A stretch of 63,181 nucleotides of DNA, the filler included, from Octopus bimaculoides (Eukaryota), in assembly GCF_001194135.2 (NCBI RefSeq). It is 3 parts of 3 records of this genome, joined end to end, with 100 filler letters (N's around TTAATTAATTAA, not from the genome) between each part and the next. Parts side by side here need not be neighbours in the genome. Positions count along the whole stretch, not along the records: positions 1 to 21,995 come from NC_068983.1; 2 more parts are not named here. One strand, given 5' to 3'. How positions within the stretch are numbered: position 1 is the first letter of the stretch; each line of letters starts with the position of its first letter. The notes under the pieces are model-generated. The model made no database searches. It worked only from the letters and a program-made list of their open reading frames with translations, and was not told where the DNA came from. The translations under genes and the position numbers were made by a program. Shown here piece by piece: positions 3,102 to 19,391 of this stretch.

Positions 3102-3510
3102 CAGCGAGCTGTCAGAATATTAGCACGTTGGACAAGATGCTTAGCAGTAGTTCGTTCATCTTTACGTTCTTAGTTTAAATTCCGTCCAGGCCGACTTTGC
3201 GCTTCATACTTTCGGAGTCGATAAATTCAGTATCAGTCAAGCGCTGGAATCGATATAATCGACTAGCCAACTCCTTCTGAAAGGATTATTAGCCTTCCAA
3301 AGGTGGCGAGCTGATAGAATCGTTAGCACGCCAGACAAAATGCTCAGTGTTGTTTCAATTTCTGAGTTCGAATTATACTAAGGTGGACTTTGCTTTTCAT
3401 CCTTTCGGGGTCGATAAAATAAGTACCAATTGAGTAATGGGGTGGGGGGATGTCAATGTAATCGACTCCTCCCACCACTCCCAATTCAGAAATTGTGTCT
3501 ATAATAAAAA
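3102..3510 (+). mobile_element. Two tandem tRNA-derived SINE family A copies (about 3102-3265 and 3299-3510)
   Basis: ggcgagctg.cagaatcgttagcacg head, gagttc(g/a)aatt B box, ttttcatcctttcggggtcgataaaataagtacc core. Confidence 0.8.
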
Positions 3511-3711
3511 CAAATTTTAGTCTCTGTTAAAAAAATATCAACCTTATCCCGGTTTGCAACTTGAAGAGGACTCCCTATGTAAATAGAAAGTTAACACTGA
3601 CTGACAAAGACCTTACGAGCGAAGAACCTATTTGTTTCTTTAATATTAGAGTCAAGTTTTGGCACAAGGCCCATCATTTCGAGGAAAGAGCTAATTTGAT
3701 TAAATTGACTC

Positions 3712-3861
3712 CGATGCTCAACTGGTACTTATTTTATCGACCCCGAAAAAGATGAAAGACTAAGTCAACCCCGGCAGCATTTGAACCCAGAACGTAAAGA
3801 CATGAAATGCCGTTAAACGTTTTGCCTGGCGTGCAAACGATTTTGCTAGCTTGCCATCTTA
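3712..3861 (-). mobile_element. SINE family A
   Basis: Reverse complement of the family A core (aactggtacttattttatcgaccccg). Confidence 0.75.
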
Positions 3862-4827
3862 ATTTGTTCCAGTTTTAGTATTATCTAGGGTATTAGAGAG
3901 ATAGAAGTAGAATTACTTCAATATTTAGTATAATCTAGAGCAATTATGAGATAGAAATGAAATTCCTTTAATATTTAGCGTTATCTAGGACTGTAGAGAG
4001 GTAGAAAGAATAGTCCTACACGGTATTTAACCTTCTTTACCTTATGTACACAAATGTCAGGGAGGGGGATTTTTTTCTCTTTTTTTTTTGCCTGTTGTGT
4101 TCTATAAAAGGTGTCAGCAATGTGCTGCCGTCGATTTAATCGATACCATTCATTTCCTTACAAATTGTTGGTATTGTGCCAAGAGTTAGAAATCAATATT
4201 TAATATTACTACGAGGAACGGAGGGGAGAGAATAGGGTGATAATCAAAGAATTGAAGATTGATTGGTTTCTGTTTTATTGTATTTATATATTTGTTTATC
4301 TTATTTGTTGTTGTTGCTGCTTAGCCTCAGAACTCTATTATTTAACGTGTCCTTTACTTTATTAATGCGGTGGAGGGATTGATTGCAGAGATGTTTGGCT
4401 GTAATTTCCATTAGGTCTAACAACCATTTCGTTCTTCCATTTGCTCTTATATTCATTATTGTTGCTTTGTCCCGCACCAACCAACTCTGATCAAATAGAC
4501 CGAGCCATGAGCAAAACTATTTCCAACCGTGGCCATCTTGACTTTTTGAGGAATATTAAGGACTACATTATCTAATGTGCCATACTTCATATAATGAAAT
4601 CTTTAAGATCGCAAGCTGCGATTTTGGAGGTATTTTTTGTATATATACGTAAATGTTAACGATATGGATATAGGTAAAAAACAATGTTAGAACGTTTGTC
4701 ATGTCAACGGATGTGGGCATCAGTTCCGTAAGCAGCCCTCGATCGTTTTCTACCCAAAAAGGGTCTTCTTAACCCAATATTTACATGCTTTTATTTAGAG
4801 GCATATCGTCCATCTTTTCATTCATCA

Positions 4828-5045
4828 AGGGTAGTGAGCTGGCAGAATTGTTAGCCCGCCGGGCATAATGCTTAGTGACATTTCTTTCCGTCTTTATGTT
4901 CTGAATTCAAACTCCTCCAACGTTGACTTTACGTTTCATCCATTCGGGGTTGATAAAATAAGTACCAGTTGAACTCTGGACTCGATGCAATCGACTTATC
5001 CCTCCCCCAAAATCGTTGGTCTTGTACCAAAATTTGAAATCAATA
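4828..5045 (+). mobile_element. SINE family A
   Basis: Head, B box and core present. Confidence 0.8.
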
Positions 5046-5561
5046 TTGTGCTGTTGCTACGACTCGAATGCTTTACGCACTTCTTCGGAAATTTATTGGA
5101 AAGAATAACATAACATAGATAAAAGAGTTAAACTAGTAATGACATGGTTAGGCTCTTTTCCTGGCGGATTTCAGTCGACAAGACATCCAAAAGTCCACTG
5201 ACAGCAGAACGCGTCTCTCACGGTCTTAATACCTTTCAATGTCAAAACAAGATATTGGAAGCAAAGATGTTGATCTCATCCTTGCAATCACTCATCACCT
5301 TAAGGAACACGGATAAATTTTGTTTTCTGTGCTCTGTTTATGTTCTGTTTTTCATTTTGTCCACATTTTTTTGTGATGTCCTGTACCCAGATATGCATCT
5401 ATATATACATGTAGATGTAGGTATGTACATACATGTACTATATATGCATATACTCACATATTATTTGTATTATATATATAAATACGTGCGTACGTACGTG
5501 TGTATGTATGTTCGTATGTGTGCATATATGTATGTACCCTGTTACTTTCTCTTATTTCAGT

Positions 5562-6265: not shown

Positions 6266-7899
6266 TACTCTTTGTTTGTTTGTAAGTATGTATATGTGCT
6301 TTTGAATATATGTGTGTAGTGTGTACATTTGCATATATGTAAATATATAGACATACAGAAAAACTACTACCGCATATATTTAGAAAACAACCCCACAATT
6401 GTAGTAATCGAATCAGTATAGAAAAATATTTCATATTGAGAAATATACCACAGCAAAGCTATCTATATATACATAACCACGCATACACGTTCATACATTC
6501 ACAAACAAACAGATATACAGAGAAACACTATGCATGCATAAACACATACACACGTAAACGCTCACACTTTCCTACATACATACGCATATACTATAACTGA
6601 CCAGCGTGTATACTGTCTGGCTTTGTCCTATACAATAATGTGTACTGTAAGAAACTATTTCGATCCGTATATACATTGTGTGTGACATGTAAAAGTGTAT
6701 ACATGTGAATATCTACAGTTATCAGCCTGCTTTGTGTCTGTATACACTATAATCCAGTCATTTAAATGTATATAGAAATATGTGTAGTTGTTTGTGCATG
6801 TATTCCTAGTGTTTCTCTATGTATTTGTTTGTTCGTGAATGTATGAACGTGTGTGTGTGCTTATGTATATATGTGCACGTAAATGTATATGTGTTAGATG
6901 TGTGCATTTGTCTATGTATGTATGTTTGATGTATGTAAGTAGCTGTGTATGTATGCAGGAAAGTGTGAGCGTTTACGCGTGTATGTGTTTATGCATGTAT
7001 ATGTACGTGCGTATGTGCGTCTCTGTGTGTATGTGATTATGTATGTATTTACATACGTATATATGCATGCATGTATTATAAAATGTACGTACATGTATGT
7101 GTTCGTTGTGCGTAGTTGTATACCTAATGTGTATAATATGAGAGCGTATAGTATAATAGTGTATACTGTGAGAGGTCACTTCTTCTCCATAACTAAATTA
7201 AGTGAGTCGTGTCAATAAGCAAACCAACAATCAAAGTTCCGAATGAATTTCAAATTGAGTCTAAACTAGCATGCCATTTAGTCCGGCCTCAGAAATGATG
7301 GATGTGGCATTATTGAATAGAATGAGGCACTCAGCTGTGAGTTATTGTCGTTAAATCAATGAACAGAAATACCGTTTTCGACACTATGCTCGGTTGGTCG
7401 ATCATGATCTCTTCGGAAACTCCTTCTGATTGCCTACTAGTTCTTCTTAGGCGAAATAATTTAGGAATTATTTATTACCGATTCTCTGTGTCAGAACTGA
7501 GGTCATTTTCATTAAGGACTGATCAATTTAAGTAGAAGATACTAAGAAATCATTTGTTATACTGAAATGCTATTGTTCGCTGATAACGATGGCAAAATGG
7601 TGAATTTCTGTTCACAGATAAGCAAAGCATAGGGACGGTCGAAGGTAGTGAGTGAGTGTGAAATATTTAGCGGGAAAAAATATATTATCGATCATTTAGT
7701 AATGGTTGGATAAACGGGGGACGATTAATCGATCACTGTTACAGTAAGAACGCTTACGGCTTTCACTTATTCACCGTGCATGTCTTAACAAGCATTTCTC
7801 GAGTTTTGTCGAAGAAACAAATAAAGGAACGATTAATTCAGACAGAGCAGCCATCCACTTTTTAACAAGTGGTTCATTTCAGTGAGTATTCAAGAAACA

Positions 7900-8280: not shown

Positions 8281-9352
8281 GTAATCCCTGTCTAGCAAAA
8301 AGAAAATAGATGGTCATAATTAGAGCATCTAGTTGTTGTTCCCGATGCATTACACTTTTCTTTATCCGTTTATATGATTCTTTTAAGCACAGAAAAGTAA
8401 ATGGAACAGAATCAAAATAAATTAACTTTTGCAAAACTTACACACAATCTTTATCCTAAGAAATGAGTAAGCTATTGCAGCATAAAACACAGTATACAGA
8501 TCTGCACATCCACCGACTCCAGATACTTGCACATATACACACTTACATGTACAAGCCTTGTTGATGTTGTTGAAATTTCAATGAAGGAGAATTGCATCTA
8601 GATTAGAAACCAGCTCTTTCTTCGTTGGCAAGAAATCTAGAAATAAAACTAAATAATTACATACATACATATATACATACATACATACATATGTCCGTAT
8701 GTATGTATGTATGTATGTATGTATGTATGTAGGTACGTATGTATGTGAGGAGAGAGAATGATACGTGAAGAGAAAGATATAGTTGACAGAGAGTAAAGGA
8801 AATATACGGCAAAGATACTTCATAAATTTTTTGTGGTAATATTGTGAGTAAGTAATCCAATAGGAAAACTTGTTTCTAAATCATTTTGAAGTGTACCAAG
8901 AAATTAAAGACTGTAATAAAATATAGATTTTTTTTCGTCCGATCCCCGAATAATGATTAACGAAGTAAAAATGGTTGCAAGAGTTTAAAAAATTACTCTG
9001 GCCAGAAAAAATACGAAAAAAATAAATGAATTGTGTACTTTTCAAATATGTTATGCTTTATATTCCCGCATGGAAATATTCACCGATAAAAAATCTTTAG
9101 AATAAAAAATATATGGACTGTAAATTACTAAGAGTGAGAAAACATAAACGGTTATAGAATTGCTAAAAGGGAAACGGAGGAAATACTATTTGGTTTGCTA
9201 TATTTTAAATCTCATTGAACTGGTGAAACTGTTGTCTGATAAGTGGTTATTGATAGAAATATATCATCGAGGAAATTTCAAATTTTGAAACGGGCTTGTT
9301 TTTTGGTGTTGGCATGTATATATGTGTTGGCACATATATATATATATATATA

Positions 9353-9851: not shown

Positions 9852-10252
9852 TAGGTGGCAAGCTAGTAGAACTGTTAGCACGCCAAGATAGTCTTTGTTT
9901 TTCCAACTTTTGAGGTCGATAAAATTAGTACAACACCGAAATTGCTGGTGTTTCGCGAAACATTTGAAATCAGTATTTTCATTTTACACAAGGTGGCGAG
10001 CTGACAGAATCGTTAGCACGCCGGGAAAAATACTTAACGGCATTTCGACCGTCTTCGCATTCTAAGTTCAAATGCTATCGAGGTCGATTTGTTCATTACG
10101 CTCTGAGTTCGGATTCCGCCGAGGTTGACTTTGCCTTTCACTTTTCGAAGTCAATAAAATAAGTACCAGTTGAACACTGGGGAGGGGAGGCAATCTAATC
10201 GACTCACCTATCTTCCCCGAAAGGCTGGTCTTTTGCCAAATGTTGAAACTAA
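9852..10252 (+). mobile_element. SINE family A: a partial copy and a full copy with internal duplication
   Basis: Two heads (about 9852 and 9990), each preceded by tattttcattttac. Confidence 0.75.
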
Positions 10253-10656
10253 TTCTGTTGTGTCTGGGGAGAATCATTCTCTTTTAGTGCTTTATAATTT
10301 AACACACTCACCAGTAAAATTTCCACTTAATTTTTTTTTTTACTTTTCTAAAATTTTCGTTGCGTCTTGCAACCTTTTCAATAGTTTTGACTCTGTCCGT
10401 TATTCACACTATGTTCCTTTTTGTTTGTTTGTGCGCATGTGTGTGGGTTAGTGTGTGTTCCTACACATGCATGTATGTATGTATGGATGCATGTGTGTGT
10501 ATGCATGTATTGTATGTGTGCATATGTATATATGTATGTGTGTATATTTCTATGTATGTATTCTGCATATTCATGTGTTTGCGTGTCCGTGTTTGTGTGT
10601 TTTTATGTATATGTGCATGTGTGTGTGTACTTCTGTCTCCTTGTGTGTGCATGTTT

Positions 10657-10691
<35 letters not shown>

Positions 10692-11470
10692 GCAACTATG
10701 TACCGTGTTTGTATGTATGGATGTGCATCTCCACATGTGTGGACGTGTGTCTCCATATGTGTCCTTGTATGAAGTAAAGNNNNNNNNNNTGTGGACGTGT
10801 GTCTCCATATGTGTCCTTGTATGAAGTAAAGTGTGTGTGTATATATGGTCATGTGTTTCAGTCTCCATTTGTGTATGTGTGCTTGTCTGTTCATATAACC
10901 TATGTACCTATCCGTCTGTATGTTGATCTATTTACTTTCATATCCATAAGCTTACATACATGTGCATATACATATATATATTCATGCACCCACCCACACA
11001 TACACACATCTATCTACATAACAGCTCACTAACTATTCTACTCTACCTATGTAAACTGTGGGTATGGGGGTATGATATCTATCATGTATATTTCCTATTT
11101 ATGTAGATAGATGCATGTATGAGTGTGTGTGTGTGGGTGTATTCATATATATGTATATTCACATGTATATAAGCATACGTATATGAAAGTAAACAGATCA
11201 ACATACAGACGGATAGGTACATAGGTTATATGAACAGACACACACATACACAAATGGAGACTGAAACACATGACCATATGCACACACACACACACACGCA
11301 CACACATATATAAACACACAAATATGGACACGCAAATACATGAATATGCAGAATACATACATACAAATATACACACATACATATATACATATGCACACAT
11401 ACAATACATGCATATACACACATGCATGCATACATACATACATACATACATACATACATGCATGTGTAGG

Positions 11471-11525
<55 letters not shown>

Positions 11526-11722
11526 ACCCACACAAATTTGCACAAACAAACAAAAAGCAGCGCAGTGTGAAGAATGGACAGAGTCAAAACTATTGAAAAG
11601 GTTGCAAGACGCAACGAAAATTTTAGTAAAATAAAATTAAGAAATAACTGGAAATTTTACCTGTGAGTGTGTTAAAGTATAAGGCACTAAAAGAGAATGA
11701 TTCTCCCCAGACACAACAGAAT
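10252..11722. repeat. About 1.47-kb imperfect fold-back (inverted duplication); arms 10252-11021 and 11099-11722
   Basis: Unique outer sequence (attctgttgtgtctggggagaatcattctc / gagaatgattctccccagacacaacagaat) and inner sequence (ctatccgtctgtatgttgatct / agatcaacatacagacggatag) are reverse complements. Confidence 0.9.
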
Positions 11723-11924
11723 ATGCTTCAGCACACGAACTCGCATAAAGAATCTTGCAAACCAAATCCAAAAACGAAATTTGAAACTAATATTTTCATT
11801 TTAAGAACTTATGATTATAAATTCAACTGAATTTATAAGAGTATGATAATATGGTAAGAGCATGATAAGAGTACATTAGTCACAAGGCGTAAAATTTTGA
11901 GAGAGGGTGAGAGATGGTCTAGTT

Positions 11925-12252
11925 AATTACACCGACTCCAATGCTCAGCTGGTACTTATTTTATTGACCTCGAAAGTGATGAAATGTAATGCCAACCTTG
12001 GTGGAAATTGAACTCAGTATGTAAAGACAGACAAAATGCTGCTTAGCATTTTGACCGCCGTGCTAACGATTCTACCAGCTCGCCGCCTTAATAATCCTTT
12101 CTACTGAAGGCACAAGGCCTGAAATTTGAGGGGTGGAAACTAGTCTATTACATCGACCCCAATATTTCACAGATACTTAATGTATCGATCCCCAAAGGAT
12201 GAAAGATGAATTCGACTTCGGCAGCTAAATCATTCTGCCAGCTCGTCGCCTT
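11925..12252 (-). mobile_element. Two SINE family A copies, minus strand
   Basis: tgctaacgattctaccagctcgccgcctt at about 12061-12089 and tctgccagctcgtcgcctt at about 12234-12252. Confidence 0.75.
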
Positions 12253-13107: not shown

Positions 13108-13174
<67 letters not shown>

Positions 13175-13205
13175 ATACATATGTATATATATAAACATAC
13201 ACTCT

Positions 13206-13243
<38 letters not shown>

Positions 13244-13254
13244 ATATGATGGGC

Positions 13255-13530: not shown

Positions 13531-13583
13531 TCCTTAAGAGCCAGACTTAGAATAATAATAATTATTATAATTGTTATTAAGAC

Positions 13584-13825
13584 TTTGAGCTGGCAGAATC
13601 ATTAGCACGCCGGACAAAATGCTTAGTGGCATTTCATCCGTCTTTTCGTTCTGTACTGAAATTCTGTCGTGGTCAACTTTGCCTTTCATCATTTCGGAGT
13701 CAATGAAATAAGCACTAGTTGACTACTAGGGTGGATGAAATAAGTACCAGTTGAGCACAGAGGTTGATGCAATCGTTTGGCCTTCTCCCCCAAAATTTCA
13801 GGCCTTATGTCCATAGTAAAAAGGA
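13584..13825 (+). mobile_element. SINE family A
   Basis: Head, core and duplicated aataagtaccagttga. Confidence 0.75.
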
Positions 13826-13937: not shown

Positions 13938-14407
13938 GGAAAGCTATCTCCACTCGCAAATTCTTTATATATTTTAAGCGACACAGTCACTGATCTTGTA
14001 TCGAGATAAACAACACGTTTTTATATCCTTGAGCAAGGGAAATACAATAACAGTACCGAATAGTAATGTTTATATGCCACCATAACGAATATATAGTATT
14101 AGCGAGTGCATATAGCTTTCGTCACTAGCTGGTGGTTGATTCACACTGAGGACAGATAATATCCAGAAACTTAAGTCTGTGAGTATCGCATAAGGTTAGA
14201 GATGAGAGCGATGACTTCCCTCGCAAATGCTATATCCGGACACAGACTGTGTGTCGATAGCCAGCTGGAAAAGATGTTTTCCTGGGGCTAAAACGACAGT
14301 AACATCGTCCTTTATAGGACTACCACGTTATGTTGGCATATAAACATTACAATTCGGTACTGTTACTGTATTTCTCTCGCTCAGAGATGTACATACATAC
14401 ATATACA

Positions 14408-14964: not shown

Positions 14965-15590
14965 TATGATCTCAGCTGATGAACCTGATGAGAGGTTCGA
15001 CATCATCAACTTTTTAATCCCTAATTCACCCAAGTTCTGCTAAACGCTTTCAAAGATTTAAATCTGGATATTTACATCAAATAGCGTCTGGATGGATTAC
15101 TTTTCAATCTGCGTCTTTACCTTGTGGTACACACAAACACCCCCTTCGGAAACTTATCATAGCGCTCTTTGCAGACTACTTTACAGACTACTTTGCATTC
15201 AAGGCATGCCAAGAAAACCGTCTTCAAAATATAGTTAACACATTCTACGCTGCATCCAGATTATTTGGCTTGACAATCAGCCTCAGTAAAACGAAGGTTC
15301 TCTCCTTCATCCTGCACCTAACAATACCCAACTACGGCCATGCATTGCCATCGATAACACACAACTCACAGAACTGACTGGACTAGGTGGTACAATATAT
15401 ACTGCAAGGCAGGCAAACAACTTCCGTAACTAACTTGCGTAAGCTGCGCCTCATGGCAAGACAAAAGAAACGTAAAAAGGCGCACGCTCCTATTTCAACA
15501 AACTATGAGCCTTGTCAGACCTACAGCCGCATTTGTGTATCTGTCTTCGGCCTAAGACGTCACGAACGTCGTTAAATATTAACCAAGTAA
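14965..15590 (+). mobile_element. RTE-clade LINE relic (RT domain and C-terminus, internally deleted)
   Basis: DGLLFNLR, ALFADY, RLQNIVNTFYAASRLFGLTISLSKTKVL, C-terminal CQTYSRICVSVFGLRRHERR* (decayed zinc-finger-like end of RTE ORFs). Confidence 0.75.
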
Positions 15591-16439: not shown

Positions 16440-17145
16440 CCCTCTTTAATTTCCACTAGTTCCCACTCGTTTATCTCTCCTGTACCTTTCTCTTTGTCTT
16501 TGATTTGTTTCTAATCCTTCAATCCCGCTGCCCCCTAACCATCTCTCCTCCTTCCATGTGGCCGGTGTCCGGCCAGCCATGGTCTTTGTTTCTTGGCCTG
16601 ACTGCCGACTGCCAACACCTCTTATGTCCATCTCCTATATTCCTGCCTTTAGGCTTTCACTTTATACACGGCAACTCAATTTGATTCGTTCTCAGTCGAA
16701 AGATACCTGTTGTTATTTCTTGTTGCTTGTATACGTAATTGTATACCATGTTCGTCGTTTTCTTGTCTTTGTTACCGTACACATTCGCTAGCTTTCTAAC
16801 AAAGGGGTTTAATGCTCTTAGCTTAGACTTTTGGGGGGCAACCAGATCGAACCATTTCAAGTGTAAATGCCCGAAATGGTCGTGACGTCTGGTGCTTGAC
16901 TGAAGAAAGAAGGCCATGAATGACCCGTCTTCTTTTGCCTGTCCTTCTAATTGTTGTTTCTCTTGTCCACCTCTGTATCGTCTATTTGTCCGAATGTTTT
17001 ATTGTCCTCTATTGCGTTTTTGTTCTTGAAGAGCGTAGGCTCGAAACGTTAAAGACTTTCTCTATTCCCGAGCGTTATACTAATACATCCATTTGTTGTT
17101 TACACCACCTGTCTTCGTCTGTTGTTTTTTCGTGAATTCTCCTAT
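16440..17145. mobile_element. Longer copy of the hammerhead-like-motif repeat family (non-autonomous, probably Penelope-related)
   Basis: Terminal ~115 bp (gaagagcgtaggctcgaaacgttaaagac...gtgaattctcc-tatata) closely matches 30642-30755; ends in (TA)n. Left boundary uncertain. Confidence 0.55.
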
Positions 17146-18149
17146 ATATATATACATATATAAGTATAATAGATACAATAGAAAAGGTTCAAATCAGGCA
17201 GACTACGATTAACNNNNNNNNNNNNNNNNNNNNNNNNNNNNNNNNNNNNNNNNNNNNNNNNNNNNNNNNNNNNNNNNNNNNNNNNNNNNNNNNNNNNNNN
17301 NNNNNNNNNNNNNNNNNNNNNNNNNNNNNNNNNNNNNNNNNNNNNNNNNNNNNNNNNNNNNNNNNNNNNNNNNNNNNNNNNNNNNNNNNNNNNNNNNNNN
17401 NNNNNNNNNNNNNNNNNNNNNNNNNNNNNNNNNNNNNNNNNNNNNNNNNNNNNNNNNNNNNNNNNNNNNNNNNNNNNNNNNNNNNNNNNNNNNNNNNNNN
17501 NNNNNNNNNNNNNNNNNNNNNNNNNNNNNNNNNNNNNNNNNNNNNNNNNNNNNNNNNNNNNNNNNNNNNNNNNNNNNNNNNNNNNNNNNNNNNNNNNNNN
17601 NNNNNNNNNNNNNNNNNNNNNNNNNNNNNNNNNNNNNNNNNNNNNNNNNNNNNNNNNNNNNNNNNNNNNNNNNNNNNNNNNNNNNNNNNNNNNNNNNNNN
17701 NNNNNNNNNNNNNNNNNNNNNNNNNNNNNNNNNNNNNNNNNNNNNNNNNNNNNNNNNNNNNNNNNNNNNNNNNATATATATATATATATATATATACATA
17801 TATAAGTATAATAGATACAATAGAAAAGGTTCAAATCAGGCAGACTACGATTAACAGACATATATATACGGGTTCAATTAGAATAAAATAAGAATTGTCC
17901 AATCTGAAACACATACTGATATATTAGAAATATAAAAATATAGAAATATAAAAATATAGAAATATAAAAATATATGAATACTAAAAATATTCATGGACAT
18001 ATAGATATATAGATATGTAAACATGATAATAATATAATATAGATGGAAATAATAATGGAATATAGAAAAAAAGATGCTTTTTTTAAAATTAAAAATATAA
18101 TGTAGAGAAAGTAATAGGCATTAAAAAGAGTTTTGGGTAACATGTTAGA

Positions 18150-18620: not shown

Positions 18621-19103
18621 CATTGTTCTGAATGAAATATCACGGAAATATGGGTAAAGAAATCCTGATAACAATTCTTAATCTCGGACATACCAGTATC
18701 TTTAGTATAACGTCTATGAGAATAAAGCAGTTCCCTATTTCAGCATATGCATACATACGCGCGCAAACACACACACACTCATATACACATACAAGCATAC
18801 ACACACACACATGCGTATATGTGTGTGTGTGAGTGTATGTGTGCGTGCGTGCGTGTGTGTATGTATGTATGTATACATACAGACATATCTATATAGATGT
18901 ACAGTCCGATGAAGTCTAGCATGCTGAATCTCTGGAGTCACTGTCATCACTCTTATTGCAAAAGTATAAACACACTTTCTACAAAAGATATTGAGTCATC
19001 TTTCAGTTTAATATCAGATTATTTTTTATTATAGTTCAGCATACAAACAAACATCAATACATGTGTGTGTGTGTGTGTGTGTGTGTAATCTGTAGTATCC
19101 ATG

Positions 19104-19178
19104 GATATCGGGTGGTTCATAGTTCATGCGTTCATTGCCTGATGAAATGAACGCATGAGCTATGATCCACCCTATGTC
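19104..19178 (+). ncRNA. Candidate pre-miRNA-like hairpin
   Basis: 27-bp upper stem (one U-U, one G-U), a C-U mismatch, then 5 more bp; 9-nt loop; unique sequence between microsatellites. Confidence 0.4.
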
Positions 19179-19391
19179 GAAGAATACTATGGATTGTACA
19201 ATAATCATCCCAGGAATACAGACTATATATANNNNNNNNNNNNNNNNNNNNNNNNNNNNNNNNNNNNNNNNNNNNNNNNNNNNNNNNNNNNNNNNNNNNN
19301 NNNNNNNNNNNNNNNNNNNNNNNNNNNNNNNNNNNNNNNNNNNNNNNNNNNNNNNNNNNNNNNNNNNNNNNNNNNNNNNNNNNNNNNNNNN

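What the first reader, a model, noticed from the sequence alone, without database searches (positions are those of the whole stretch)
19104..19178. Pre-miRNA-shaped hairpin in otherwise microsatellite DNA
Seen: GATAT-C-GGGTGGTTCATAGTTCATGCGTTCATT, loop GCCTGATGA, AATGAACGCATGAGCTATGATCCACCC-T-ATGTC, i.e. about 33 bp of stem, plus a further 7-bp helix (19097-19103 with 19188-19194) beyond a 9-nt bulge. All three wobble positions are G-U on the + strand but A-C on the minus strand, favouring a + strand RNA. Cutting about 11 bp from the base predicts a 22-nt 3p arm TGAACGCATGAGCTATGATCCA (19148-19169) starting with U. No CNNC motif at the usual spacing. It matches no conserved bilaterian miRNA that I recognise. 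Established: coleoids have a large lineage-specific miRNA expansion. Inference: a candidate novel miRNA or a young fold-back.
Basis: partly seen in the sequence, partly recalled or inferred. Interest (0 to 1): 0.7.

Follow-up and report, generated by a model that had tools for sequence, protein, structure and literature searches.

The report
Lone hairpin-forming palindrome, unproven microRNA
The hairpin is real, but it is best read as one of several local inverted DNA duplications in a repeat-rich, non-coding stretch; nothing obtainable here shows that it is a microRNA gene.

Summary
Window 19104-19178 forms a 33-position stem (29 Watson-Crick pairs, 2 G·U, 2 mismatches) with a 9-nt loop. It is the core of a longer imperfect palindrome, about 19087-19195 (BLAST 19082-19200). 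As + strand RNA it folds at -59.7 kcal/mol (z = -10.6). It is the only non-microsatellite hairpin among the most stable folds in the window.

No evidence links it to a known microRNA:
- Every Rfam hit is 27 bits or less, against gathering scores of 33-100.
- Nothing matches in the cephalopod microRNA supplements held here or in the full-text library.
- There is no second copy in the window and no related sequence in any searchable collection.
- Three of the four MirGeneDB criteria need small-RNA reads and cannot be tested.

In wider context the stem keeps pairing to more than 50 bp. There is no CNNC or apical UGU motif. The G·U strand bias (4:1) is not significant.

The window holds three other local inverted repeats, including a 1.47-kb palindrome, plus several inverted microsatellites.

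Best reading (about 0.62): a local inverted duplication, probably from replication template switching, that is decaying neutrally. At most it is raw material for a microRNA. Rivals are a MITE copy (about 0.2), a real lineage-specific microRNA (about 0.07) and an assembly artefact (about 0.02). The organism could not be identified. Interest is low.

The parts
19087..19195 (.). Whole imperfect palindrome. The arms are 19087-19136 and 19146-19195; paired positions sum to 38282. BLAST extends it to 19082-19200.
   Evidence: Ungapped arm comparison: 41 of 50 Watson-Crick, 4 G·U on the + strand, 1 on the - strand, 4 other mismatches. Self-inverted BLAST gives 77% over 119 nt, E = 1e-22, and 80% over 103 nt. 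DNA fold -32.2 kcal/mol, z = -11.2.
19104..19136 (+). 5' arm of the 33-position core stem
   Evidence: 29 Watson-Crick pairs, 2 G·U and 2 mismatches against 19146-19178.
19137..19145 (+). Central loop GCCTGATGA, 9 nt. It is itself partly palindromic (C19138:G19144, T19140:A19142).
19146..19178 (+). 3' arm of the core stem
   Evidence: The arm core 19146-19171 is the reverse complement of 19111-19136 with 2 mismatches.
19115..19136 (+). Hypothetical 5p product, only if the hairpin is transcribed and cut about 22 bp from the loop. A start at 19116 would give a 5' U and a UG at -14.
   Evidence: Geometry only. No expression data.
19148..19169 (+).
   Evidence: Sequence confirmed. Geometry only. 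Its seed site TGCGTTCA is absent from the held Zolotarov seed tables.
19179..19187 (+). 9-nt segment GAAGAATAC.
19062..19086 (.). (TG)n microsatellite next to the left edge of the palindrome. In a longer transcript it extends the predicted stem.
19232..19391 (.). Assembly gap (160 N), 36 nt beyond the right edge of the palindrome and preceded by (TA)n

Best explanation
The hairpin is a local inverted duplication: a DNA palindrome of about 109 nt with a short centre. It most likely arose in one step from a replication error, either template switching or fold-back priming, in microsatellite-rich, non-coding DNA. It has since picked up substitutions at roughly the neutral rate.

It has no dedicated function. 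If the + strand lies inside a transcript, the RNA would fold into a very stable stem of 44 to over 50 bp, which Drosha or Dicer could occasionally cut. So it is at most raw material for a microRNA, not an established gene.

Shown: the palindrome, its extent, its arm divergence, its single copy within the window, and the other palindromes nearby. Inferred: the template-switch origin, the neutrality and the lack of function.
For: 1. The structure is a palindrome through the centre, not two repeats around an unrelated spacer. Two of the four loop position pairs are also complementary.
2. Mismatches are spread over the arms with no significant heterogeneity: inner 33 positions 29 Watson-Crick, outer 17 positions 12 Watson-Crick, Fisher p = 0.24. 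The outer part still exceeds chance (p = 2e-4). This is the pattern expected of a decaying palindrome, not of a 35-bp stem kept by selection. Five of the nine differences are transitions and four are transversions, which looks unremarkable.
3. The same 20.5 kb of non-N sequence holds three other non-microsatellite inverted repeats: a 1.47-kb palindrome at 10252-11722 (78-82% identity), 6465-6592 against 6781-7004 (84-93%), and 14030-14087 against 14326-14383 (91%). It also holds inverted microsatellites at 8650-8750, 13140-13250 and 18750-18880. Local inverted duplication therefore recurs at this locus.
4. There is no second copy of either arm in the window. A SINE-like family has at least 6 copies in the same window.
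5. No known RNA family matches, and there are no credible coding ORFs around it.
6. Base rate from PMC10710096: template switching made more than 6,000 suitable hairpins in primates, and at least 18 of them became miRNA genes, about 0.3%. The two octopus genomes studied hold only 162-164 curated miRNA genes each (PMC9699675).
Against: - The inner 33-position stem and 9-11 nt loop do fit pre-miRNA dimensions.
- The + strand is 11 kcal/mol more stable than the - strand.
- A UG sits at -14 if the 5p arm starts at 19116.
- Neutrality and lack of expression are inferred, not shown. No ortholog, outgroup or small-RNA data could be obtained.
- Copy number in the source genome is unknown, so a transposon origin is not excluded.
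Confidence: 0.62

Rival explanations
1. It is a copy of a miniature inverted-repeat transposable element (MITE) or fold-back element whose two terminal inverted repeats make up nearly the whole element. The human Made1 element behind the mir-548 family is of this type (recalled from memory, not checked here). It would be present in many copies in the source genome.
For: - The whole-length palindrome of about 109 nt with a short centre matches the architecture of very short MITEs.
- The region is rich in transposable elements: a SINE-like family with at least 6 copies and a decayed reverse-transcriptase-like ORF.
- Another inverted repeat in the window, 14030-14383, has a MITE-like layout of 58-bp arms and a 238-bp spacer.
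Against: - No other full or partial copy occurs in 22 kb.
- No target-site duplication is visible. Only a GT dinucleotide is shared at the edges, and the left one belongs to a (TG)n tract.
- The termini show no motif I recognise from a DNA-transposon superfamily (my own knowledge).
- A six-frame translation of the element found nothing among 5.8 billion protein clusters. This is a weak negative, because such short ORFs are rarely called.
Confidence: 0.2
2. It is a bona fide lineage-specific microRNA gene. It would be transcribed on the + strand, cut by Drosha about 11 bp above the 19104/19178 junction and by Dicer near the loop, yielding roughly 19115-19136 (5p) and 19148-19169 (3p).
For: - It is an imperfect hairpin with far more than 16 paired bases.
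- The 33-position stem equals 22 + 11 bp, and the loop is 9-11 nt.
- The + strand is more stable than the - strand.
- The 3p candidate starts with U, and a UG lies at -14 for a 5p start at 19116.
- If the source is a coleoid, that lineage has many novel miRNA families (PMC9699675).
Against: - No Rfam family matches. The best score is 27 bits against gathering scores of 33-100, to unrelated plant, viral, mammalian and nematode families, on both strands.
- No arm sequence or seed 8-mer appears in the held Zolotarov 2022 files, and no arm sequence appears in the Euprymna supplements or in 8.3 million full texts.
- There is no CNNC and no apical UGU or GUG.
- In context, pairing continues to over 50 bp with no clear single-stranded basal junction.
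- The hairpin is unusually stable at -64.5 kcal/mol per 100 nt. My recollection is that typical pre-miRNAs are less stable than this.
- The G·U strand bias of 4:1 is not significant.
- The base rate for such hairpins becoming miRNAs is about 0.3%.
- The coleoid origin is unverified.
Confidence: 0.07
3. It is an assembly artefact: a chimeric fold-back read or contig end next to the gap at 19232.
For: - The palindrome ends 36 nt before a 160-N gap.
- This assembly does carry gap-flanking artefacts: 100% direct duplicates at 17143-17213 = 17785-17855 and at 10738-10779 = 10790-10831.
Against: - The arms differ at 9 of 50 positions, whereas artefactual fold-backs are identical.
- Unique, non-palindromic sequence continues for 36 nt between the palindrome and the gap.
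Confidence: 0.02

Closest known systems
Template-switch-generated hairpins (Mönttinen, Frilander and Löytynoja 2023, PMC10710096)
   Same: Adjacent inverted copies with a very short centre. They give a near-complete stem-loop of pre-miRNA size in non-coding DNA, and they arise locally rather than by transposition.
   Different: The event itself cannot be shown here, because that needs an outgroup or ancestral sequence. The arms are already 18% diverged, so it is not a fresh event.
Canonical animal pri-/pre-miRNA (MirGeneDB criteria, PMC12539619)
   Same: An imperfect hairpin with more than 16 paired bases, a stem of about 33 bp and a loop of 9-11 nt.
   Different: There is no read evidence, no family homology, no CNNC or UGU motif, and no clean single-stranded basal junction. 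The stem is nearly perfect and unusually stable.
Palindromic MITEs that give rise to miRNAs (Made1 and the mir-548 family; from my own knowledge, not checked here)
   Same: A short element that is almost entirely two inverted repeats and folds into a near-perfect hairpin.
   Different: No target-site duplication, no second copy in the window, and copy number in the genome is unknown.
Hairpin-RNA (hpRNA) endo-siRNA loci of Drosophila (from my own knowledge)
   Same: A long, near-perfect inverted repeat that could feed Dicer.
   Different: Those stems run to hundreds of base pairs. This one is about 50 bp, and no small-RNA evidence exists.

Membership tests
Animal microRNA gene (MirGeneDB criteria as listed in PMC12539619) | Imperfectly paired hairpin precursor with at least 16 paired nucleotides in the stem | tested here: met
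   31 of 33 positions are paired, including 2 G·U.
Animal microRNA gene (MirGeneDB criteria as listed in PMC12539619) | Small-RNA reads from both arms | not testable with these tools
   No small-RNA data are available, and the organism is not identified.
Animal microRNA gene (MirGeneDB criteria as listed in PMC12539619) | 5' homogeneity of the reads | not testable with these tools
   No small-RNA data.
Animal microRNA gene (MirGeneDB criteria as listed in PMC12539619) | 2-nt offsets on the duplex (Drosha and Dicer signature) | not testable with these tools
   No small-RNA data.
Animal microRNA gene (pri-miRNA geometry, as summarised in PMC10710096) | Stem of about 35 bp with an unstructured apical loop of 10 nt or more, bounded by a single-stranded basal junction | tested here: inconclusive
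   The core stem is 33 positions with a 9-nt loop. With 70-110 nt of flank the predicted stem continues to over 50 bp with only small internal loops.
Animal microRNA gene (processing motifs; from my own knowledge, and not obligatory) | Basal UG at -14, apical UGU or GUG, CNNC at +16 to +18 | tested here: not met
   UG is at -14 only if the 5p arm starts at 19116. There is no UGU or GUG at the loop and no CNNC.
Any described RNA family (Rfam 15) | Score at or above the family's gathering threshold | tested here: not met
   The best hit is mir-606 at 27.2 bits against a threshold of 80. All 22 hits are 27 bits or less, against thresholds of 33-100, and they fall on both strands.
Cephalopod novel miRNA families (Zolotarov et al. 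2022, PMC9699675) | Same seed or sequence as an annotated family, and present in a second species | tested here: inconclusive
   No arm sequence or seed 8-mer was found in the held supplement files. Those files are truncated and hold no full mature sequences. Presence in a second species is not testable.
MITE / fold-back transposon | Terminal inverted repeats | tested here: met
   The whole element is an inverted repeat. This is trivially true of any palindrome.
MITE / fold-back transposon | Target-site duplication flanking the element | tested here: not met
   Only GT is shared at the edges, and the left GT lies inside a (TG)n tract. The boundaries are fuzzy.
MITE / fold-back transposon | Multiple dispersed copies | tested here: inconclusive
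   No other copy occurs in the 22-kb window. The source genome is not searchable. The prokaryotic, viral and metagenome collections gave only chance bacterial palindromes.
Template-switch / local inverted duplication | Adjacent inverted copies with a short centre, arising locally | tested here: met
   The arms are separated by 9 nt and the loop is partly palindromic. Other local palindromes occur in the same window.
Template-switch / local inverted duplication | Ancestral or outgroup sequence that lacks the inverted copy | not testable with these tools
   No orthologous sequence could be retrieved.

The most novel reading that the evidence does not exclude
A species- or genus-restricted microRNA (or short hairpin endo-siRNA) caught after birth from a template-switch palindrome in microsatellite-rich DNA. 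It would be expressed from the + strand and processed into a duplex at about 19115-19136 and 19148-19169.
Probability: 0.08. Interest if true: 0.4.

Novelty: new member of a known kind. Interest (0 to 1): 0.15.

Why it matters
If it were an expressed miRNA, it would add one young, lineage-restricted gene and one example of hairpin birth by local inverted duplication. That is useful but incremental.

As it stands, its main value is as a caution. In this kind of genome, stable pre-miRNA-shaped hairpins arise as by-products of local palindrome formation. Microsatellite palindromes in the same window also draw spurious miRNA-family hits (mir-297, mir-466, mir-3149). Shape alone should therefore not be used to nominate miRNAs.

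Tried and rejected
- **Rfam.** I searched the whole piece and the hairpin alone. Only sub-threshold generic hairpin hits came back.
- **Cephalopod miRNA literature.**
  - The Zolotarov 2022 supplements were searched for arm sequences and for six plausible seed 8-mers. Nothing was found.
  - A control search showed these files hold no full mature sequences, so this is a weak negative.
  - The Euprymna miRNA paper supplements gave nothing.
  - Arm 16-mers in the full-text library gave nothing.
- **Public collections.** The pattern CATGCGTTCATT-N3-15-AATGAACGCATG was scanned against the metagenome, prokaryotic genome and viral contig collections. Three hits were bacterial or metagenomic short palindromes with no flank similarity. 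These collections do not cover animal genomes.
- **Copy-number proxy.** A six-frame translation of 19086-19224 was searched against 5.8 billion protein clusters, with no hit.
- **Organism identification.** Every route failed.
  - The reverse-transcriptase-like ORF gave no homologs, and Pfam RVT_1 scored only 13 bits.
  - Five window ORFs are not on record.
  - Two searches with SINE-frame translations timed out and a third found nothing.
  - The representative-protein search gave five weak Logan hits.
  - The contigs of the one hit looked up (P0002) share only a 47-nt SINE core at 85% identity.
  - The SRA run numbers of those contigs are not mentioned in any held paper.
  - SINE k-mers are not in the literature, and ARAGORN found no tRNA.
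- **Rejected: assembly artefact.** The arms are 18% diverged.
- **Rejected: strand bias as evidence.** Wobbles favour the + strand only 4:1, which is not significant.
- **Rejected: a conserved core stem against decayed flanks.** Fisher p = 0.24.
- **Rejected: part of a larger palindrome across the gap.** No inverted match was found between 18890-19086 and 19392 onward.

Full report

Yes.
- In the ungapped register, where paired coordinates sum to 38282, the 33-position stem has 29 Watson-Crick pairs.
- It also has two G·U pairs (19106·19176, 19123·19159) and two mismatches (C·U at 19109/19173, U·U at 19116/19166).
- The loop is 19137-19145, GCCTGATGA.
It is one of two competing outer registers. 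RNAfold prefers 19090-19098 with 19184-19192.

The fold is far beyond chance.
- + strand RNA: -59.7 kcal/mol against shuffles at -25.8 ± 3.2, z = -10.6, 0 of 200 shuffles as good.
- - strand RNA: -48.7 kcal/mol, z = -8.8.
- Single-stranded DNA: z = -11.2.

I folded 110-nt windows along both strands of the whole piece. This is the only hairpin of complex sequence among the most stable folds (-57.7 kcal/mol, against a window mean of -17.0, sd 9.1). All the others are inverted microsatellites.

**2. What is it at the DNA level?**

- Self-BLAST gives an inverted self-match at 19082-19200, 77% over 119 nt, E = 1e-22. A second run gives 19087-19195 at 80% over 103 nt.
- In the ungapped register the two 50-nt arms (19087-19136 and 19146-19195) form 41 Watson-Crick pairs. 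There are also 4 G·U on the + strand, 1 G·U on the - strand and 4 other mismatches.
- The outer 17 positions (12 Watson-Crick) are clearly more complementary than chance (p = 2e-4). They are not significantly worse than the inner 33 (29 Watson-Crick; Fisher p = 0.24).
- So there is no statistical sign that a ~35-bp stem is being preserved while its flanks decay. The pattern fits one palindrome decaying uniformly.
- Two of the four position pairs inside the loop are also complementary. That suggests a palindrome that once ran nearly through its centre.
- Arm divergence is 18%, so it is not especially young.
The 11 kcal/mol advantage of the + strand rests on those few positions.

**3. Copies and relatives**
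- Neither arm recurs in the window, even with three mismatches allowed. A sensitive BLAST of 18890-19231 against the window finds only the self-inverted match and microsatellite matches.
- The palindrome does not continue across the gap at 19232-19391.
- A structured pattern scan of the metagenome, prokaryotic genome and viral collections returned three short bacterial or metagenomic palindromes with no flank similarity. These are chance matches, and the collections do not cover animal genomes.
- A six-frame translation of the element found nothing among 5.8 billion protein clusters.
- Genome-wide copy number therefore remains unknown. That is the main gap in this assessment.

**4. Is it a known RNA?**

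No.
- Rfam 15 gives nothing at gathering thresholds anywhere in the piece.
- For the hairpin alone, 22 families score 10-27 bits against thresholds of 33-100. They are unrelated plant, viral, mammalian and nematode miRNA families plus a few other RNA types, and they fall on both strands. This is generic hairpin scoring.
- The many mir-297, mir-466, mir-3149 and mir-1277 hits elsewhere in the window all lie on (TG)n, (TA)n or (TACA)n palindromes, below threshold.
- The held supplement files of Zolotarov et al. 2022 (PMC9699675) contain neither the arm sequences nor the 8-mer target sites of six plausible seed registers. Those files are truncated and do not hold full mature sequences, so this is a weak negative.
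- The Euprymna miRNA paper supplements and 8.3 million full texts contain no arm sequence.

**5. Fit to microRNA biogenesis rules**
- MirGeneDB's criteria are listed in PMC12539619: an imperfect hairpin with at least 16 paired bases, reads from both arms, 5' homogeneity and 2-nt offsets. Only the first can be tested here, and it is met.
- The geometry is partly favourable. A 33-position stem equals 22 + 11 bp, the loop is 9-11 nt, the 3p candidate starts with U, and UG lies at -14 if the 5p arm starts at 19116.
- Several features count against it. There is no CNNC and no apical UGU or GUG. With realistic flanks the predicted stem runs on to over 50 bp, using the (TG)n tract, with no clear single-stranded basal junction.
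- The 75-nt hairpin is unusually stable at -64.5 kcal/mol per 100 nt. My recollection is that typical pre-miRNAs are less stable than this.

**6. Context**
- The piece is non-coding. No ORF has credible complexity or a Pfam match apart from a 13-bit RVT_1 trace at 15018-15374.
- It is rich in microsatellites, has six N gaps, and carries at least six copies of a SINE-like repeat.
- It contains three other non-microsatellite inverted repeats:
  - a 1.47-kb palindrome at 10252-11722 (78-82% identity);
  - 6465-6592 against 6781-6872 and 6938-7004 (84-93%);
  - 14030-14087 against 14326-14383 (91%).
- It also has inverted microsatellites at 8650-8750, 13140-13250 and 18750-18880.
- Local inverted duplication is thus a recurrent mutational outcome at this locus. 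The hairpin is the smallest complex-sequence example.

**7. Explanation and rivals**

Best explanation, about 0.62: a local inverted duplication, most plausibly from replication template switching, that is now decaying neutrally.
- The mechanism and the base rate come from PMC10710096. More than 6,000 suitable hairpins arose this way in primates, and at least 18 became miRNA genes, about 0.3%.
- The two octopus genomes studied carry only 162-164 curated miRNA genes each.
- If the + strand is transcribed, it would give a long, stable hairpin that Drosha or Dicer might sample. It is raw material at most.

Rivals:
- A palindromic MITE, about 0.2. The architecture fits, but there is no target-site duplication and no second copy in the window.
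- A bona fide lineage-specific miRNA, about 0.07. Only the shape supports it.
- An assembly artefact, about 0.02. The 18% arm divergence and the 36 nt of unique sequence before the gap exclude it.

These origins and a miRNA function are not mutually exclusive.

**8. Organism**

- Protein searches with a reverse-transcriptase-like ORF and with SINE-frame ORFs found nothing or timed out.
- Five window ORFs are not on record.
- The representative-protein search gave five weak hits, all from unnamed Logan assemblies.
- I looked up the contigs of one of them (P0002; runs SRR11869384, SRR11869385 and SRR11869390). They share only a 47-nt SINE core at 85% identity.
- Those run numbers appear in no held paper.

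**9. Verdict**

This is a real, statistically striking hairpin of an ordinary kind. It is novel only as one more unannotated instance of a hairpin-forming inverted duplication. Interest is low unless small-RNA data show processing.

Noticed in passing
window 10252-11722: A large imperfect palindrome of about 1.47 kb, centred near 11061. The self-inverted match 10831-11291 is 82% over 477 nt, and 10252-10688 against 11288-11722 is 78% over 443 nt. The arms carry (TG)n on the left and (CA)n on the right.
   Followed up: partly
window 6465-7004: An inverted repeat. 6465-6592 matches 6781-6872 and 6938-7004 in reverse complement (84-93%), with an insertion in the right arm.
   Followed up: no
window 14030-14383: 58-bp inverted repeats (91% identity) around a 238-bp spacer. 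The layout is MITE-like, but no clear target-site duplication is visible.
   Followed up: partly
window 3290-3530, 3640-3870, 4830-5060, 9985-10210, 11920-12100, 13580-13730: At least six copies, on both strands and 75-80% identical, of a ~170-nt SINE-like repeat. It appears to have a tRNA-like head and a conserved core (...GACTTTGCCTTTCATCCTTTCGGGGTCGATAAAATAAGTACCAGTTG...). The 47-nt core recurs at 85% identity in Logan contigs from SRR11869384, SRR11869385 and SRR11869390. ARAGORN calls no tRNA.
   Followed up: partly
window 17143-17213 = 17785-17855, and 10738-10779 = 10790-10831: Perfect (100%) direct duplicates flank the N gaps at 17214-17773 and 10780-10789. They are probably scaffolding or gap-closing artefacts.
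   Followed up: no
window 8650-8750, 13140-13250, 18750-18880 (and other microsatellites): Inverted microsatellites, (CA)n...(TG)n and (TACA)n...(TGTA)n, fold as very stable hairpins down to -67 kcal/mol. They draw sub-threshold Rfam hits to mir-297, mir-466, mir-3149, mir-1277 and MIR5565. These are false miRNA look-alikes.
   Followed up: yes
window 15018-15374 (+): A 119-aa open frame with a faint reverse-transcriptase signature (Pfam RVT_1, 13.3 bits, E = 0.067, below cut-off). It is probably a decayed LINE fragment. The protein search found no homologs.
   Followed up: partly
window 12993, 15708, 19232, 20904 (gap starts): These four of the six assembly gaps begin inside (TA)n tracts, so (TA)n arrays appear to be what broke the assembly there. 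Flanking (TA)n was not checked at 10780; the 17214 gap has (TA)n on its right edge.
   Followed up: no
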